DNA from: Hyaloraphidium curvatum SAG 235-1
Taxonomy: Eukaryota; Fungi; Monoblepharomycota
Length of the DNA: 64,000 nucleotides
Direction of reading: 5' to 3'
NCBI GenBank assembly: GCA_025558095.1
Contig: JAIVFI010000036.1
Span: 372,001 to 436,000, forward strand
Position 1 is the first letter of the stretch; the number at the start of each line of letters is the position of its first letter. Shown piece by piece: positions 40 through 30,199 of the stretch. The position numbers were made by a program, and so were the translations under genes. The notes under the pieces were generated by a model that saw nothing but the letters and a program-made list of their open reading frames with translations, was not told the DNA's origin and did not search any database.

Positions 40-1980
40 TCAAACGATCACTTTCAAGACATCAATCACCCATGCCAGCCACGTCTGCGTTAGCTTCGGA
101 TCGCAAAGCGCTAGTTTGCCCTCGCACTTCTCCATGAGTGCCTTCTGCGATGCGTAGAACGAATCGAGAGGAACCTTGGCCGCCAGGAGCACAGCGAGTC
201 CGATGTACGCAATGTCCAGTATCGGCGGCAGCTGTGCTCTCGGGAGCTTGCCTTCGGGAAGCAAAGGCGAGGTGACTTTGTAGAACGTGTTGAGCGTTCG
301 CATCCTGGAATCCCACTCGGGGAGTTTGGTTGCGACGTGGGGCAGGTATCTGGACGGATCCAAGGTCGCACCGAAACTGTCCGGAGAGGCAAGGCTCACT
401 GCGAAACCGGGCCGGTGGTCTCCGTAAGCGCCGAGCACGTACGGTCTGCCCAACCCCGCAAGCTGCCTTCTGAACTCCTCTAGCGCGCGCGCACTCTGAA
501 GGACCCGCGAAAGGTAGCTCTGCAGGTGCACCACGTCGCGCTCCGAGTGGATCCAGGGGAACCAGTTCTTCCTCCACATGGCCGGGAGCTGGTGCCGCGA
601 GGATTCGTACGGCACATGATTCCGGATGGTCATGATGAACACGAAAAGCGGCTGGCTCGAGTTGCGGAAAGGAGCAGAGGCGTTGAGGGCCGCCTGGAAG
701 AAGAAACTGTCGTACGGATGGTATCCCTCAGACACGCCTAAGGACGACGAGTCGATGAACTCGTCGAATCCGTAGCTCCGGTAGGCTGAGTCACTGTTCA
801 GCAGTCTGCCATCGGAAGGGTAGATAGCAATGGTGTGGTAGCCGTGGCTCTTGAGGAACCCAGCAAGCGAATGGTGGAGCCGCGGAGCAATGCTAAAGGG
901 CGCGTAGTTGCCGGCTGGGCCGAAGAACCCCGGCAACACGCCGGAATGTGTCGCAAATTCCATCATCCACGTCCCGCCGACTTCGACAGTGGATCTCAAC
1001 CCTCCGATGGCCACGGTCTCTCGATCTGGCATGAACAATGAATTGGGTCGGCAGAGCTCGGTGATGTTGCAGGCCTTCAACGTCCAGGGATCGAAGGTCG
1101 ATTCCTCCATCACGAGGAAGATGTCCGGGAGGTTGGCGGCGCCGACTTTATGGTCCTTGGTCGGCCCATGCTCAACCCGGGTCCAGCCCCATGCCTCCTT
1201 TGCCTCTTCGCCTGAGCTTCTGGACGGAAAAATGATGCGCACGAACTGACACAGGTGGATGAAGTGCGACAGCGCTGTTGTATTCGCGGCCAAGTCGAAC
1301 CAAACTCCGAACTCTGCAGAGTCCCGGCTCGCTTCCCAGATTGTGAGTTTTGCCACGGAGAGGGTGATGAGGGATGCTCCAAGAAGAAATGACAAGACAA
1401 AGCGGAGTCCGATGAGACGCGTTTCGCTTCTCGCCTTGCCCTGTCCCGGAAGCAGGACTTCGACTTCGTTCCATCCACTGCCGTCCATAGCAGATTCCCA
1501 GCCTGTTGCAAGATCCGTTCGGTGTGCAGGTCCCAGCCTCGTAGTTCGTAAGCAATGCCCCGGTGACTCCGCCCAGCGAAGCCAGCAGACAGCAGCCCCG
1601 AATACAGCCAGAACTCCCAATGTGCCGAAGACCACGAAGGGGAAGCTGCGCACGACCAAGAGCGCCTCCGGACCCAGGTACCAGACGTCGTACGGTCGCA
1701 AGGGCTGGTTCATGAGCGAAAGCTTCACGGCAGAAGCGAGCTGGACCGCGCCCGGCAGCGCTCCGCCCACGAAAAGACCAAGCGCTGGCCGCCGACAAAT
1801 CCCCGCGGTGAAGAGGGCGAGGCCGACGGCAAATACCGCCACCCAGAAAGCGTCGCGCACTGTCCGCTCGGCCGACAGCAGCGAGGCCAGGACGCAGAGG
1901 AAGGAAGCTGTCGCGACGGCGAAGGGCAGGCCAGCGGCCCCGAAGCAGCGTATGGAGCGCAGGAGCCATCGCCGTTTCAT
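40..1980 (-). CDS. LtaS/sulfatase-like (alkaline phosphatase superfamily) membrane protein of bacterial type, intronless
   Basis: Several N-terminal TM helices, then motifs IFLVMEESTFDP, GGTWMMEF (catalytic Thr position), TIRNHVPY and AYGDHRP. ATG at 1980 (MKRRWLL) taken as the likely start. Confidence 0.75.
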   Translation of the reverse strand: MKRRWLLRSIRCFGAAGLPFAVATASFLCVLASLLSAERTVRDAFWVAVFAVGLALFTAGICRRPALGLFVGGALPGAVQLASAVKLSLMNQPLRPYDVWYLGPEALLVVRSFPFVVFGTLGVLAVFGAAVCWLRWAESPGHCLRTTRLGPAHRTDLATGWESAMDGSGWNEVEVLLPGQGKARSETRLIGLRFVLSFLLGASLITLSVAKLTIWEASRDSAEFGVWFDLAANTTALSHFIHLCQFVRIIFPSRSSGEEAKEAWGWTRVEHGPTKDHKVGAANLPDIFLVMEESTFDPWTLKACNITELCRPNSLFMPDRETVAIGGLRSTVEVGGTWMMEFATHSGVLPGFFGPAGNYAPFSIAPRLHHSLAGFLKSHGYHTIAIYPSDGRLLNSDSAYRSYGFDEFIDSSSLGVSEGYHPYDSFFFQAALNASAPFRNSSQPLFVFIMTIRNHVPYESSRHQLPAMWRKNWFPWIHSERDVVHLQSYLSRVLQSARALEEFRRQLAGLGRPYVLGAYGDHRPGFAVSLASPDSFGATLDPSRYLPHVATKLPEWDSRMRTLNTFYKVTSPLLPEGKLPRAQLPPILDIAYIGLAVLLAAKVPLDSFYASQKALMEKCEGKLALCDPKLTQTWLAWVIDVLKVIV

Positions 1981-2127
1981 GCTTCGGGCGGTGGGAAACA
2001 ACGAGGGATTGCGACGCGGATCCCAGCGCGACCCGATCACAATCGATCGTCTCGTGGGACGTTGTTGGGGACGCGTTGTTTTCTTCGCGCGCGGACGTCG
2101 GCAACCTGCTCCGAGCAGCATCGGATA

Positions 2128-3642
2128 ATGGCGGCCGAAGAGAAGGATGCCGAGGCCGGCGACGGGATTCGCTTGCGCGTCTCGCCATTCCCGGACCATC
2201 GCGTGCCGGCGTTCCCCGTGACCCCAGCGGAATACTTGGCCGTCGTTCCCTCGTTCCCTCCTCTGAGGCCCTCGCTCGCTGGTGTGGCACCTCCTCCGGA
2301 CCGCGCAGACGAGCTGCGCGCCTCACGTCTCCTCACGCGGCGGACGCTCCTTGAAGGCCTCTCGGCGGAACCGATCCTGCGTTCCATTACGGCCTTGCAG
2401 CTGAGCACGGTACCCGTCGCCGCGAAGGCTCGGGAGCGCGGACTCCTCATGTGGATGTTTAGCATCGCATGTTTTGGGGCCACGTGGGCGTTCCGTGAAC
2501 AGTACTTTGGCAACGACGCCCGCAACTTTGGAGTCGGCTTCGGAACCCTGATGGTTCTGGTCTTCCAGCTTGCCATCGTAAATCCTTCCTTCCATGCTTT
2601 TCAGAAGCCTCTGCTGGGTGGGGGATCGGCTTCGTTGCCTCCAAAGACTGTTTCGGCACCCACGCTGGACTCCTCGCCCCTTGCCGGCCTCGTCCGTTGG
2701 GGTCAGCTTGTCTCGGAAAATGCCGAGGGAAACCTGCTCCTGCACGATCCTCTGGACAAGCTGTGCCCTTGCACGGCCCCCGGTTGCGCCGGCGGCCTCA
2801 TCCGCGGCACTGCGGTGCTCCGGTTCCTTGAGCTAGTGTTTAAAACCTTTTGGCTCGTTTTGTTCTCTTTGAGCTTGTATTGGACGCCGCTAGTTACCAT
2901 GGCGCAGAGCATTTGGTTTACGCCTTGGAGCGCAGTTTTGGGCAGCCTGGCTGTCGTGACCTTGTCACTCTGGATCTTTCCCAACATTATCGCGCGCTTC
3001 AGCGGTAACATTCCGATCTTCCGCCTATCGGAGCGGGTATCACACAGGGCCATGAAGCTCGCCCTGGCCGACCTCTTGCTCCGGCTCGGACAAGGGGTCA
3101 CGAAGGAGCGGACCCCGGTGTCGAACGAACCCTACGCGGAACTCCACGCCGTGTTCACTGCCGTCTGGGAAACAAGAATCTCCAGCTTCCACGTATCAAC
3201 ACCCGTCATATGGGCCTCGTTGGTTGCCTTAGTCATGGCCATCGTCAACATGGGGGCTTGTGCTTGTGTACCTGGACTGTATTTGACGTACTTCGCATAC
3301 TCCTTCTTTGGCCAGATGCTTTTCGACCTGCTTGCACTCGCTGCTTCCAATGCCCAAGTCACTTCCATACGCAACCTGTACCTGGAAGCCCAGCGCGAGA
3401 TAATGGAGCTTCCTATCCCAACGGAGCAGGGTTCTGCGGCGGATCTCCGGAGACACGAAGCAATACTGGGGAGCTACGCCGATTTGGACAGATTCAAGGG
3501 CAGATTTATCGGCTTTGTGGTGGACTACAACGCCTGCCGGACGATCCTGGTGACGCTGGTGACGCTGATTGTGGGCGTGTGGAGCATCTTGCGGGGGCTT
3601 GGGGTGACGGCAACCATGGACTTTGCCTGCCCTGCCACGTAG
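2128..3642 (+). CDS. 7-TM membrane protein, gustatory-receptor-like/7TMIC candidate, intronless
   Basis: About 504 aa ORF from ATG 2128 with seven hydrophobic segments; C-terminus FKGRFIGFVVDYNACRTILVTLVTLIVGVWSIL. Confidence 0.55.
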   Translation: MAAEEKDAEAGDGIRLRVSPFPDHRVPAFPVTPAEYLAVVPSFPPLRPSLAGVAPPPDRADELRASRLLTRRTLLEGLSAEPILRSITALQLSTVPVAAKARERGLLMWMFSIACFGATWAFREQYFGNDARNFGVGFGTLMVLVFQLAIVNPSFHAFQKPLLGGGSASLPPKTVSAPTLDSSPLAGLVRWGQLVSENAEGNLLLHDPLDKLCPCTAPGCAGGLIRGTAVLRFLELVFKTFWLVLFSLSLYWTPLVTMAQSIWFTPWSAVLGSLAVVTLSLWIFPNIIARFSGNIPIFRLSERVSHRAMKLALADLLLRLGQGVTKERTPVSNEPYAELHAVFTAVWETRISSFHVSTPVIWASLVALVMAIVNMGACACVPGLYLTYFAYSFFGQMLFDLLALAASNAQVTSIRNLYLEAQREIMELPIPTEQGSAADLRRHEAILGSYADLDRFKGRFIGFVVDYNACRTILVTLVTLIVGVWSILRGLGVTATMDFACPAT

Positions 3643-27479: not shown

Positions 27480-27554
27480 CTGCTCGGCTTGAAGCATCAT
27501 GAAGGACCGGCGGCAGAAGCCTTTCCCGATCCCCAATCATTGCAGCCAAAGCAG
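27480..27554 (-). promoter_or_regulatory. Eukaryotic SECIS element (type II) in the 3' UTR of the DsbA/FrnE gene
   Basis: mRNA sense: CUGCUUUGGCU-GCA-AUGAU-UGGGGAUCGG-GAAA-GGC-UUCU-GCC-G-CCGGUCCUUCA-UGAU-GCUUCA-AGCCGAGCAG. This gives helix I, a UGAU/UGAU quartet, a 10-bp helix II, unpaired AAA 12 nt after AUGA, and an apical mini-stem. Confidence 0.88.
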
Positions 27555-27604
27555 GATACGAAAGCACCCCTCACCCCCGACAATCAAACGATTCATTCAG
27601 GCGC

Positions 27605-28723
27605 TCAGAGCTTCTCCGATACCTCTTCGATGAGCTCCGCAAACAGCTCTGCCGTCCAACGTCAGCCAAAAGGTGCCACCTGACCGGCCATGGTCAACCA
27701 AGACTCACCGCTGTCTTGCGCACCTGAAACGGAGTACTTTTTGTTGAAGATGAAAAAGGGAACTCCGTTGACTGGCGACGGAGTGTCAGCTGATAGCTTC
27801 ATTGCTGCCATGTCATCTGCTCACCGCCGCGGCGCGACCAAGACATGGCCTCCCCCAGGATCCGCTATCAAAAGCCAAAGGCGAACGAGACAGGCACTAG
27901 CGTCAGATAAAGGGCGAGTGCCTTTGCGACGCGTGCTTACGTCGTAGTCCTGTCGTGGAAGGAGGGTGAGCGAAGGGCACAACCACTGGCAAGCATCCAC
28001 TCATACCTTGCCGCTCTTGAGGTAGGTCTCGATCTCCTCCTTGTCGACTCCCACCGAAGTAGCAATGCCCACGAGCACGTCGAGGTCGGAGATGTTCTTT
28101 CCGCAGCGAGTTAGGCACCCCGTTGGCAAAGCAACCACATCCAATACCTTGCACTCGTCAAAGTAGGCCGCAAAGAGCTTGTCCATCAGCTTGTCCGTGA
28201 CCTCTGGCCCGTACTTGGACTGAACAAAGTCGACGAGGCGGTGCGACTCCACGGTTTGCGCAATCACCCCGTCGTAACGCACGGTGAGTCCCTCCTTCTC
28301 GAACACTTGCTGCATGTGCGGGATCATCTGTTTAACGCGAGCCTCGCCGAACTTGGACTTGTAGCGCTCGAGCTTGTTGACACCCTGTGGTTTAATAGCC
28401 ATCAGGCACCGCTCGTCATAAGAGTCCATCGTAATCTCTAGCCCAACCTGCTTCGGCAGCGTCGGATCGAGCAGGAAGGGGTGCCAAGTGATCTTGAACT
28501 CCAGTTCGTCCTTGAACTTGGCCATCGCCCGCTCGAGTCGGCGCTTGCCGACCGTGCACCAAGGTCAGATAGTATCTGTACGAGGAGGAGTGAAGCCGAG
28601 AGAGTTCGAGGGAGTAAGCCGAGAGAGTTGGAGGGAGTGAAGCCGAGAAGCGACTAGCGAACTGCAAGGCTACCGACCAGACACAATGTCGATGGTGAGG
28701 ACCTTCTTCTTGCCGTCGGTCAT
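27605..28723 (-). CDS. DsbA/FrnE-family thioredoxin-fold oxidoreductase, predicted selenoprotein (U19-P-W-C22)
   Basis: Exon 1 (28723-28678) MTDGKKKVLTIDIVS splices to GAT ACT ATC TGA CCT TGG TGC ACG GTC GGC AAG CGC (D-T-I-U-P-W-C-T-V-G-K-R). Later motifs WHPFLLDP, VNGVPFFIFN, VSGAQ. Seven exons; SECIS downstream. Confidence 0.88.
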
Positions 28724-29015
28724 GGTTCCAAAGGTTCTGTACGCAGCAAGCGGCCGGAGACTGGGTGACAGGACAAGTGGGAGGCATGGCCAAAAGGCCG
28801 CGTGGATCGCGTTAGCGGCGCTCGCGGGCGTGCGGCTCTCGCCAATCGTATACCAACGTAGTGGAAGGAGCGACGAGGCGGGTCGGAGCGACGGTGGAGA
28901 GCGCTCCACGAAATCTCATAAGCGGAGCCACGCTGCTATTAGCTCTGCTATGGGCTGGCTGCCGCGGAGTAGCCCCAGGGTGATCACAAACTTGCCCGGA
29001 GCCCAGATATCGCCA

Positions 29016-30199
29016 ATGGAGTTCTTTTCGGACGTGTTGCAGACCCTTGAAGCCGAGAATGAGACACGGGAGGTGCGATGCGCCGGGATTCGGCCCCTGA
29101 ACGCGTCCAACTGGAGCGCGGTGACTTGTGCAGAACATCCGGAACGTCGTTCGGGAGCTGGAGAGGACATGCCGGTCTATCGTGGCGATCATGAGCCAGA
29201 TACATTCGTCGGCTTCTGCAGAAAGTGATTGGAGCTGCTGTTGGGCCCGTGGGAAGCGAGATGGACCGATCGCGCCTCGTTCTCCCGACAGGTGTGACGA
29301 GGATCACGGCGGAGGCCGCGGCCAAGATGGGAGATGTGCGAACGCTCTTGACGAAGCTGGCGCAACAGGTTCCGGCGGATCAATACTATCGGTGAGGGAC
29401 GACACGGCTCACGACCGGTCCTGTCAACTGAACCACTTCGCCATGAACTCGTCAGATACAACGGGATGTGGTCCTTCACTCTGCAATCAGGTGGCTGCAA
29501 CGAACTTCATTCATGGATGAGGGCTGACTTGGATTCCATCATGTGTTGACTCGGACAGCCGTCTTCTTGGCTGCGCTGACGACCTACGTCCAACACGAGC
29601 GATTAATCACCGTTCCCGAGGTGGAACAAGCCCTAGGAGGTGCGCTCGTTATGTGCGGCAGAGAAAGTGCTGGGGTATCTCACCTCCGGGTCAACAGTCC
29701 CGGTTTCGCTAAACGGCGAGTTGCCAAACTTCCATATCGGCGTCGAGGACCTGCTACATGGGATGGTCTCCTTAACAGGCGAGCTGGTGGGTTCGCCGCG
29801 GCGAAAGCTGTGCTCTGGAACCAATTGAAATCTTCATCCTTCGGCTAGTCTCGGTTGGCAGTCAACAGGTGAAGTGATCTCGTCGTTCCGCGGTCGCACC
29901 GCGCCTGAGGCGTCCCGCAGCGTAACCTACGGCGACTTCGACCGCCCCTTGCGGATATCCAAGTTCGTCGGCGACCTGTACAGCGGCTTCCAGCTGCTGA
30001 ACCTGAAGAACGACGCGCTGCGGAAGCGGTTCGATTCCATCAAGTACGACCTCAAGAAGATCGAGGAGGTACGTGGCCGGGCGACCACGCTGGAAAACGC
30101 TGATCGCGTGCGCAGGTCGTGTACGACATTTCCGTCCGCGGGCTGGGGTCCAAGGAACCCGCGGCACCGGCGGCGGACTCGGGCCCGGCACCGGCATGA
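29016..30199 (+). CDS. TSN: Translin
   Basis: FHIGVEDLLHGMVSLTGEL, SVTYGDFDRPLRISKFV, FQLLNLKNDALRKRFDSIKYDLKKIEEVVYDISVRGL; multi-exon. Confidence 0.9.

What the first reader, a model, noticed from the sequence alone, without database searches (positions are those of the whole stretch)
27480..28723. Hidden fungal selenoprotein: DsbA/FrnE oxidoreductase with UxxC active site and a 3' UTR SECIS
Seen in sequence: after removing intron 28677-28576 (GT...AG), the frame reads IDIVS-D-T-I-TGA-P-W-C-T-V-G-K-R-R-L. The TGA (28567-28565) sits exactly at the first Cys of the family CPWC motif. The rest of the protein is intact across six introns (WHPFLLDP, cis-Pro GVPFF, SGAQ), and a SECIS-shaped hairpin starts 51 nt after the stop. 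Established: Sec typically replaces the nucleophilic Cys of CxxC in thioredoxin-fold enzymes; most fungi lack Sec, but its use has been reported in a few early-branching fungi. Inference: this is a real selenoprotein. I recall Sec-DsbA from algae and bacteria but not among reported fungal selenoproteins, so it may be new for fungi. The ORF track truncates it by starting at M28525.
Basis: partly seen in the sequence, partly recalled or inferred. Interest (0 to 1): 0.95.

Follow-up and report, generated by a model that had tools for sequence, protein, structure and literature searches.

The report
Selenocysteine DsbA/FrnE oxidoreductase in a chytrid
This is very probably a real selenoprotein gene of the early-branching fungus Hyaloraphidium curvatum, a DsbA/FrnE-type thiol oxidoreductase whose first active-site cysteine is replaced by UGA-encoded selenocysteine; the public annotation cuts it short, and the family, known from bacteria, algae and sea squirts, has not been reported from fungi in the literature I could search.

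Summary

- **Transcript:** a spliced contig from a public run joins every exon of the model, including intron 1 (28576-28677) and a 9-nt micro-exon. It keeps TGA 28565-28567 unchanged.
- **Active site:** the TGA lies opposite the first Cys of CP[WF]C in every full-length relative with the anchoring motif.
- **Conservation:** two related genomes (L040, L041) keep the same TGA. The 14 codons upstream change mostly synonymously.
- **SECIS:** a form-II SECIS sits at 27484-27549(-). Rfam SECIS_1 gives 29.3 bits, E = 7e-4, below the gathering score of 35. Its shape recurs in both relatives, with 13 of 23 pairs changed on both sides.
- **Machinery:** the genome has tRNA-Sec, SepSecS, Sec-containing SPS2, a PSTK-like gene, EFSec and an SBP2 homologue. 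It also has a deiodinase-like selenoprotein with its own SECIS.
- **Organism:** Hyaloraphidium curvatum (Monoblepharomycota). NCBI lists only the 186-aa part after the TGA.
- **Relatives:** the closest named ones, from Gonapodya, have Cys.
- **Correction:** translation probably starts at 28919, adding a presequence-like N-terminus of 33 residues.

It is a new fungal member of a known selenoprotein family. Selenium incorporation itself is untested.

The parts
28858..28949 (-). First exon seen in the transcript. It holds the probable true start codon ATG 28919-28917 and 21 codons of a presequence-like N-terminus. The 5' limit is not determined; the contig runs 49 nt beyond 28900.
28761..28857 (-).
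   Evidence: joint 28760|28858
28678..28760 (-). It encodes ...MTDGKKKVLTIDIVS and the first base of the Asp codon.
28576..28677 (-). Intron 1 (GT..AG). Its removal puts the TGA in frame with the upstream exon.
   Evidence: joint 28575|28678
28448..28575 (-). Exon with the active site D-T-I-U-P-W-C and helix alpha-1 (TVGKRRLERA...WHPFLLDP).
28565..28567 (-). In-frame TGA read as selenocysteine, opposite the first Cys of the family's CP[WF]C motif.
28385..28447 (-). Intron 2.
28148..28384 (-). Exon 3 (79 codons, helical insert of the DsbA fold).
28097..28147 (-). Intron 3.
28007..28096 (-). Exon 4 (30 codons).
27950..28006 (-). Intron 4.
27941..27949 (-). 9-nt micro-exon (D-Y-D).
   Evidence: the letters lying between the two sides of joint 27864|28006; also present in P0001
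27865..27940 (-). Intron 5.
27825..27864 (-). Exon 6.
27772..27824 (-). Intron 6.
27709..27771 (-). Exon 7 with the cis-Pro loop (NGVPFF) and SGAQ.
27649..27708 (-). Intron 7.
27605..27648 (-). Last coding exon; the stop codon is TGA 27607-27605.
27484..27549 (-). Form-II SECIS element in the 3' UTR: AUGA, a 10-bp helix II, an AAA loop with a GGC/GCC mini-stem, UGA on the 3' side, and helix I.

Best explanation
The locus is an expressed, eight-intron gene of Hyaloraphidium curvatum. It encodes a DsbA/FrnE-type thioredoxin-fold thiol-disulfide oxidoreductase whose redox motif is U-P-W-C. UGA 28567-28565 is recoded to selenocysteine through the form-II SECIS at 27484-27549 in the 3' UTR, read by the genome's SBP2, EFSec and tRNA-Sec. 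Sec replaces the exposed, nucleophilic first Cys of CxxC and would form a selenenylsulfide with the second Cys during catalysis. The full product is about 218 residues from the ATG at 28723. More probably it is 251 residues from the ATG at 28919, with a basic N-terminal extension free of acidic residues that looks like a mitochondrial presequence. Shown here: the gene structure, the TGA in the mRNA, conservation of the TGA, its flanks and the SECIS shape, and the presence of the machinery. Inferred: actual Sec insertion, the redox chemistry and the targeting.
For: Splicing and TGA in the RNA: one search shows all eight joints with no base differences. The deposited protein P0001 equals the model from Met 28525 onward. 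Cys is opposite the TGA: every full-length relative with the anchoring motif reads ...SDxxCP[WF]C.[IV]GKRRLE..., and tblastn puts the Gonapodya CPWC over TGA-PWC. The TGA is conserved in L041 and L040, with introns at three different positions around it. The 14 codons upstream of the TGA score 8/4/2, 9/3/2 and 7/5/2 identical/synonymous/non-synonymous in the three pairs. SECIS: 29.3 bits over the full model length. The RNAalifold consensus of the three orthologous 3' UTR elements has 13 of 23 pairs with double changes. It is 87% paired against 39-47% for slid controls, and 0 of 500 shuffles reach it. Machinery: tRNA-Sec at 78 bits with anticodon TCA; SepSecS at 199 bits; SPS with the G-U-GCKV site; eEFSec domain IV at 41 bits plus GTPase and domain II pieces; a PSTK-like gene; an SBP2 L7Ae domain whose best PDB hit is 7zjw_B (77-78). 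A second selenoprotein, deiodinase-like with S-U-PPF, has a 32.8-bit SECIS. In the tree, the Sec clade is sister to the Gonapodya Cys proteins, with SH-aLRT 97.
Against: Nothing here shows selenium in the protein. The SECIS score is below Rfam's gathering threshold. The locus was not among the candidates listed by the genome-wide SECIS scan, which scored only 121 of 229 first-look candidates. Rfam finds no SECIS in the two relatives, so their elements rest on my own scan and a three-sequence consensus derived from those same sequences. The transcript contig stops at 27576 and does not cover the SECIS. Run X1 is recorded as RNA only by a guess, although a contig spliced at eight GT..AG introns can hardly be DNA. 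It may also come from the strain that was assembled, so it is not independent for the TGA base itself. The organisms behind L040 and L041 are unknown.
Confidence: 0.9

Rival explanations
1. The TGA is a true stop. The gene makes only the 186-residue protein from Met 28525, as annotated at NCBI, and the upstream exons form a 5' leader or a regulatory upstream ORF.
For: The deposited annotation P0001 starts at that Met. An upstream ORF ending in TGA would look the same in a single genome.
Against: The truncated product lacks strand beta-1 and the whole CxxC motif that defines the fold's activity. The leader is conserved as protein, with mostly synonymous changes, in three genomes. It aligns residue for residue with the N-termini of Cys homologues. 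A SECIS-shaped element is conserved downstream.
Confidence: 0.04
2. It is a pseudogene or nonsense allele of a Cys-type DsbA.
For: TGA is one base away from TGC or TGT.
Against: The same TGA occurs in three diverged genomes (60-82% protein identity), with every other exon intact and all splice sites kept. The gene is transcribed and correctly spliced. No other frame disruption is present.
Confidence: 0.02
3. The UGA is read through, but mainly by a near-cognate tRNA that inserts Cys, Trp or Arg rather than Sec.
For: Cys insertion at Sec codons is known for some selenoproteins under selenium shortage (my own knowledge, not tested here).
Against: A complete Sec pathway and a SECIS are present, and the position is the classic Sec site of this family (PMC2874816). 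Nothing suggests general UGA reassignment, since the gene's own stop codon is UGA.
Confidence: 0.03
4. A sequencing or assembly error created the TGA.
For: None.
Against: The genome and the transcript contig agree, and two other assemblies have TGA at the same codon.
Confidence: 0.01

Closest known systems
DsbA-like selenoproteins of bacteria, green and other algae, Ciona and amphioxus (PMC2874816; PMC7539508)
   Same: The fold family is the same. Sec replaces the first residue of the UxxC motif. The SECIS is form II with a mini-stem in the apical loop. The annotation error is also the same, with the upstream part holding the TGA taken for UTR.
   Different: The host is a fungus, for which this family is not listed among the seven families of the fungal selenoproteome preprint (bioRxiv 10.1101/314781). 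I did not align it with the published algal or chordate sequences, which were not at hand, so orthology with them is untested.
Gonapodya prolifera thioredoxin-like proteins KXS20988.1 (P0003) and KXS18916.1 (P0004)
   Same: These are the closest named relatives, at 51% and 43% identity, from the same phylum. They are the sister clade in the tree and have the same N-terminal IDIVSDTI-x-P-W/F-C-x-x-GKRRLEKA block.
   Different: They carry Cys (CPWC, CPFC) where this gene has TGA. As annotated they lack the N-terminal extension.
FrnE of Deinococcus radiodurans (PDB 5cnw, 5cp1, 5e59)
   Same: It is the best solved relative of the clade, matching Gonapodya P0003 at E 8e-31 over residues 5-212. It has a DsbA-like thioredoxin fold with a CxxC motif at the start of helix alpha-1.
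   Different: FrnE is bacterial, about 260 residues long and all-Cys. Its extra C-terminal Cys-containing tail (my own knowledge) has no counterpart here, since this protein ends at ...EEVSEKL with no Cys.
Published fungal selenoproteins: SPS, AhpC, MsrA, DI-like, TR, SelenoU and SelenoH (bioRxiv 10.1101/314781)
   Same: The recoding system and the lineage are the same. This genome also has Sec-SPS and a DI-like selenoprotein.
   Different: The protein family is different. That study also noted that many fungal genes lacked a SECIS detectable by standard tools, which fits the Rfam misses in L040 and L041.

Membership tests
Eukaryotic selenoprotein gene (UGA recoded to Sec) | In-frame UGA at a position where homologues have Cys or Sec | tested here: met
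   Cys of CP[WF]C lies opposite TGA 28567-28565
Eukaryotic selenoprotein gene (UGA recoded to Sec) | Protein-level conservation on both sides of the UGA across species, with the UGA itself conserved | tested here: met
   TGA is kept in L040 and L041, and the upstream 14 codons change mostly synonymously
Eukaryotic selenoprotein gene (UGA recoded to Sec) | SECIS element in the 3' UTR (AUGA, unpaired AA, GA quartet, helices I and II) | tested here: met
   full-length SECIS_1 match at 29.3 bits, E 7e-4, but below the gathering score of 35; the shape is conserved with compensatory changes in two orthologues
Eukaryotic selenoprotein gene (UGA recoded to Sec) | UGA present in the mature, correctly spliced mRNA | tested here: met
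Eukaryotic selenoprotein gene (UGA recoded to Sec) | Sec machinery in the genome (tRNA-Sec, PSTK, SepSecS, SPS, EFSec, SBP2) | tested here: met
   PSTK and SBP2 rest on weaker matches than the others
Eukaryotic selenoprotein gene (UGA recoded to Sec) | Selenium shown in the protein (75Se labelling or mass spectrometry) | not testable with these tools
   an experiment is needed
DSBA-like thioredoxin domain, Pfam PF01323 (FrnE-like branch) | Match to the family profile | tested here: met
   the six-frame match at this locus scores 30.9 bits against a cut-off of 25.6, and P0001 carries PF01323. Single exon pieces score below the cut-off, at 23.2 and 12.6 bits
DSBA-like thioredoxin domain, Pfam PF01323 (FrnE-like branch) | CxxC redox motif at the N-terminus of helix alpha-1 | tested here: met
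   U-P-W-C is at the aligned position, with Sec in place of the first Cys
DSBA-like thioredoxin domain, Pfam PF01323 (FrnE-like branch) | cis-Pro loop near the C-terminus | tested here: inconclusive
   G-V-P-F-F is present in exon 7. The cis conformation can only be inferred, as no structure was predicted
FrnE proper (Deinococcus type) | C-terminal Cys-containing tail beyond the DsbA domain | tested here: not met
   The protein ends right after the domain with no Cys. The tail as a defining feature is from my own knowledge

The most novel reading that the evidence does not exclude
The gene encodes the first organelle-targeted, probably mitochondrial, selenoprotein of a fungus and adds a new family to the fungal selenoproteome. 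The conserved upstream exon is a cleavable presequence. The two in-frame AUGs, the second in the better context, could give mitochondrial and cytosolic forms. The split between Sec in the Hyaloraphidium lineage and Cys in Gonapodya records a recent Sec/Cys exchange inside one fungal phylum.
Probability: 0.4. Interest if true: 0.6.

Novelty: new member of a known kind. Interest (0 to 1): 0.5.

Why it matters
Fungi were long held to lack selenoproteins, and only a handful of early-branching species and seven protein families have been described. This adds a further family and a further species. It corrects a truncated public protein record, which lacks its active site. It also gives a natural Sec/Cys pair within one phylum (Hyaloraphidium lineage against Gonapodya) for asking what selenium buys a thiol oxidoreductase. 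The three orthologous SECIS elements, two of which Rfam's model misses, are useful training cases, because standard tools were reported to miss many fungal SECIS elements.

Tried and rejected
- **SelB model:** the top match to the bacterial model TIGR00475 turned out to be mitochondrial IF-2. EFSec was found instead with the eukaryote-specific domain-IV model.
- **KTI12/PSTK Pfam model:** it hit a single locus that may be KTI12 itself. The PSTK candidate came from TIGR03574, at only 30.5 bits against a cut-off meant for archaeal full-length proteins.
- **L7Ae hits:** the one in a 437-aa frame is RPL7A, and two others are NHP2 and RPL30.
- **Rfam on the relatives:** no SECIS was found in L040 or L041, whether scanning whole loci or only the 3' UTRs.
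- **Genome-wide SECIS scan:** it did not list this locus, and only part of the candidates were scored.
- **Truncated relatives:** I first took those starting just after the CxxC motif as hidden Sec forms. L042 shows that at least one is simply an intron-split Cys gene, so no count of Sec forms is claimed.
- **First L041 codon comparison:** it used a wrong exon boundary and was redone.
- **Literature gaps:** the supplements of PMC9457484 and the final Nature Microbiology paper (PMC6551623) are not held. I therefore could not check whether Hyaloraphidium is among the 11 Sec-encoding genomes, or what the final family list is.
- **Earlier scan notes:** The search of earlier findings returned nothing.
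- **Joined model:** Searches used single exons by reference, the continuous ORF 28004-28525(-) and database proteins. Exons were concatenated only inside scripts to count codon changes.

Full report
**Observation.**
- ATG is at 28723-28721.
- A GT..AG intron spans 28677-28576.
- The frame then reads D-T-I-TGA-P-W-C-T-V-G-K-R-R-L-E-R-A, with the TGA at 28567-28565.
- The mechanical ORF list starts the gene only at Met 28525.

My exon model has exons at 28723-28678, 28575-28448, 28384-28148, 28096-28007, 27949-27941, 27864-27825, 27771-27709 and 27648-27605. It gives 218 codons and ends in TGA at 27607-27605.

**Organism and annotation.** The continuous ORF 28004-28525(-) found a 186-residue NCBI protein, 'thioredoxin-like protein [Hyaloraphidium curvatum]'. 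Its sequence equals my spliced model from Met 28525 to the end, including the 9-nt micro-exon. Its recorded contig length, 535027, equals that of the window's contig C36. Hyaloraphidium is a member of Monoblepharomycota. So the deposited model supports introns 2-7 but is cut off just after the TGA and lacks the active site.

**Expression and splicing.** One public run holds the locus. Its 815-nt contig lies on the window in eight pieces, and all seven joints shown are CT..AC on the plus strand, which is GT..AG on the gene's strand.
- The joints include 28575|28678, which is intron 1.
- At the 27864|28006 joint the contig carries eight extra letters, which are the micro-exon.
- No base differs from the window, so the TGA is in the mature mRNA.
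- The run is labelled RNA only by a guess, but a contig lacking eight introns cannot be genomic.
- The contig ends at 27576, so it does not reach the SECIS.

**Homology at the TGA.** An exhaustive HMMER search with P0001 gave 5520 relatives. Every full-length one in which the downstream anchor motif was found reads ...(I/V)-x-S-D-x-x-C-P-(W/F)-C-x-(I/V)-G-K-R-R-L-E.... tblastn of the Gonapodya protein P0003 puts its CPWC over TGA-P-W-C. The closest solved relative of that protein is Deinococcus FrnE, with E = 8e-31. The locus passes the Pfam DSBA cut-off in the six-frame genome search, at 30.9 bits. Single exons fall just below it.

**Conservation of the TGA.** Two Logan contigs encode the closest relatives, at 60-82% protein identity. 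Both have TGA at the same codon.
- The neighbouring intron sits at a different place in each of the three genomes: before the Asp codon, inside the Thr codon, or inside the Pro codon.
- The 14 codons upstream of the TGA differ mostly synonymously. The counts of identical/synonymous/non-synonymous codons are 8/4/2, 9/3/2 and 7/5/2.
- That pattern is expected only if this stretch is translated.
- A metagenomic relative, L042, has Cys with an intron inside the motif. So truncated database entries are not all Sec forms.

**SECIS.** Rfam SECIS_1 matches 27484-27549(-) over the whole model, with AUGA, AAA and UGAU in place. The score is 29.3 bits with E = 7e-4 for the 401 bases searched, below the gathering score of 35.
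- Rfam reports nothing in the relatives.
- A simple structural scan finds an AUGA ... AAA-plus-mini-stem ... UGA element 65, 99 and 72 nt after the three stop codons.
- RNAalifold folds the three into one SECIS-shaped consensus, with 13 of 23 pairs changed on both sides.
- On that structure 87% of cells pair, against 39-47% when partners are slid, and no shuffle out of 500 reaches it.
- The caveat is that only three sequences were used and the structure was derived from them.
- Other SECIS candidates in the genome have the same form-II layout.

**Sec machinery and other selenoproteins in this genome.**
- tRNA-Sec scores 78 bits and ARAGORN calls anticodon TCA.
- SepSecS scores 199 bits.
- SPS carries the canonical G-U-GCKV site.
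- eEFSec domain IV scores 41 bits with no hits in the control genomes. NKVD, domain II and G-S-F-G-Q-S-G-K pieces lie alongside it.
- A PSTK-like P-loop kinase is present, separate from the KTI12 locus.
- An L7Ae domain has human SECISBP2 as its best PDB match in both exon pieces, at adjacent residues.
- A deiodinase-like gene with S-U-PPF lies just upstream of a 32.8-bit SECIS.

**Start codon.** The 5' part of the transcript contains one more ATG, at 28919-28917. It is in frame through the 5' intron, with no stop before 28723. This assumes the 49 contig letters beyond 28900 are colinear with the window.
- It adds 33 residues with five Arg, many Ala, Ser and Thr, and no Asp or Glu.
- L040 and L041 have a matching upstream exon of 21-22 codons beginning with Met. 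It has the same composition and an intron in the same phase, followed by 9 further codons leading into the internal Met.
- I read this as a targeting presequence, probably mitochondrial, with about 0.6 confidence. No predictor was available to test it.

**Evolution.** The closest named relatives are two Gonapodya prolifera proteins with Cys. In a quick maximum-likelihood tree the three Sec sequences form a clade (SH-aLRT 98). That clade is sister to the Gonapodya pair plus one metagenomic protein (SH-aLRT 97).
- The careful tree search did not finish, and the three Sec rows are truncated or fragmentary.
- The topology fits vertical inheritance with a Sec/Cys exchange inside the phylum. Its direction is open.
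- The nearest paralogue in this genome is only 32% identical.
- A divergent neighbour gene starting at 29016(+) is recognisable beside L040 and L041 as well.

**Comparison with the literature.**
- The fungal Sec study lists SPS, AhpC, MsrA, DI-like, TR, SelenoU and SelenoH, and never mentions DsbA (bioRxiv 10.1101/314781). Gonapodya is among its Sec users.
- Amses et al. mapped Sec use to 11 early-diverging genomes without gene lists in the text I could read (PMC9457484).
- DsbA-like UxxC selenoproteins with form-II SECIS, and the same misannotation, are documented in bacteria, algae, Ciona and amphioxus (PMC2874816, PMC7539508).
- No held paper links this family to fungi.

**Verdict.** This is very probably a genuine selenoprotein gene (0.9), and a new fungal member of a known selenoprotein family. 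Selenium incorporation, the enzyme's substrates and its location remain to be shown.

Noticed in passing
window 28858-28949 and 28761-28857 (minus strand): There is an extra 5' exon and intron. The in-frame ATG at 28919 adds a 33-residue basic N-terminus with no acidic residues. A matching exon is present in L040 and L041. It is probably a mitochondrial presequence. The second ATG (28723) has the better context, with A at -3.
   Followed up: partly
L046 = G000:C31:196500-200500, about locus 1845-3100 (+): The SBP2-like L7Ae domain (best PDB hit human SECISBP2) is followed in the same open frame by ankyrin repeats. That would be an unusual architecture for SBP2.
   Followed up: partly
L034 = G000:C3:1121810-1124873; SECIS at C3:1123310-1123373 (+): A deiodinase-like selenoprotein gene (…GSHS-U-PPF…, …EAHASDEWP…) lies directly upstream of a 32.8-bit SECIS.
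   Followed up: partly
L006 = G000:C2:989966-993439 (minus strand): The selenophosphate synthetase gene has an in-frame TGA at the canonical …LKG-U-GCKV site, so it is itself a selenoprotein.
   Followed up: partly
L033 (G000:C30:527668-527729, minus) and L035 (G000:C3:598032-598093, minus): These are two more SECIS_1 candidates, at 36.2 and 28.7 bits, with the same form-II shape. The genes upstream were not identified from the very GC-rich frames. They may be further selenoproteins.
   Followed up: no
window 27941-27949 (minus strand): This 9-nt micro-exon encoding D-Y-D is confirmed by the transcript contig and by the deposited protein. In L040 and L041 the same residues lie in ordinary exons.
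   Followed up: yes
window 29016 onward (plus strand): A head-to-head neighbour gene begins MEFFSDVLQTLEAENETREV…, at most 67 bp from the known 5' end of the DsbA transcript. The arrangement appears conserved next to L040 and L041.
   Followed up: partly
proteins P0007, P0027, P0054 and about 40 others: Many database relatives begin just after the CxxC motif, among them a Paramoeba atlantica transcript. Some may be unrecognised Sec forms. At least one (L042) is only an intron-split Cys gene.
   Followed up: partly
L040:16-108 (+): A tRNA gene with a 22-nt insertion at the anticodon loop, presumably an intron, lies on the relative's contig.
   Followed up: no
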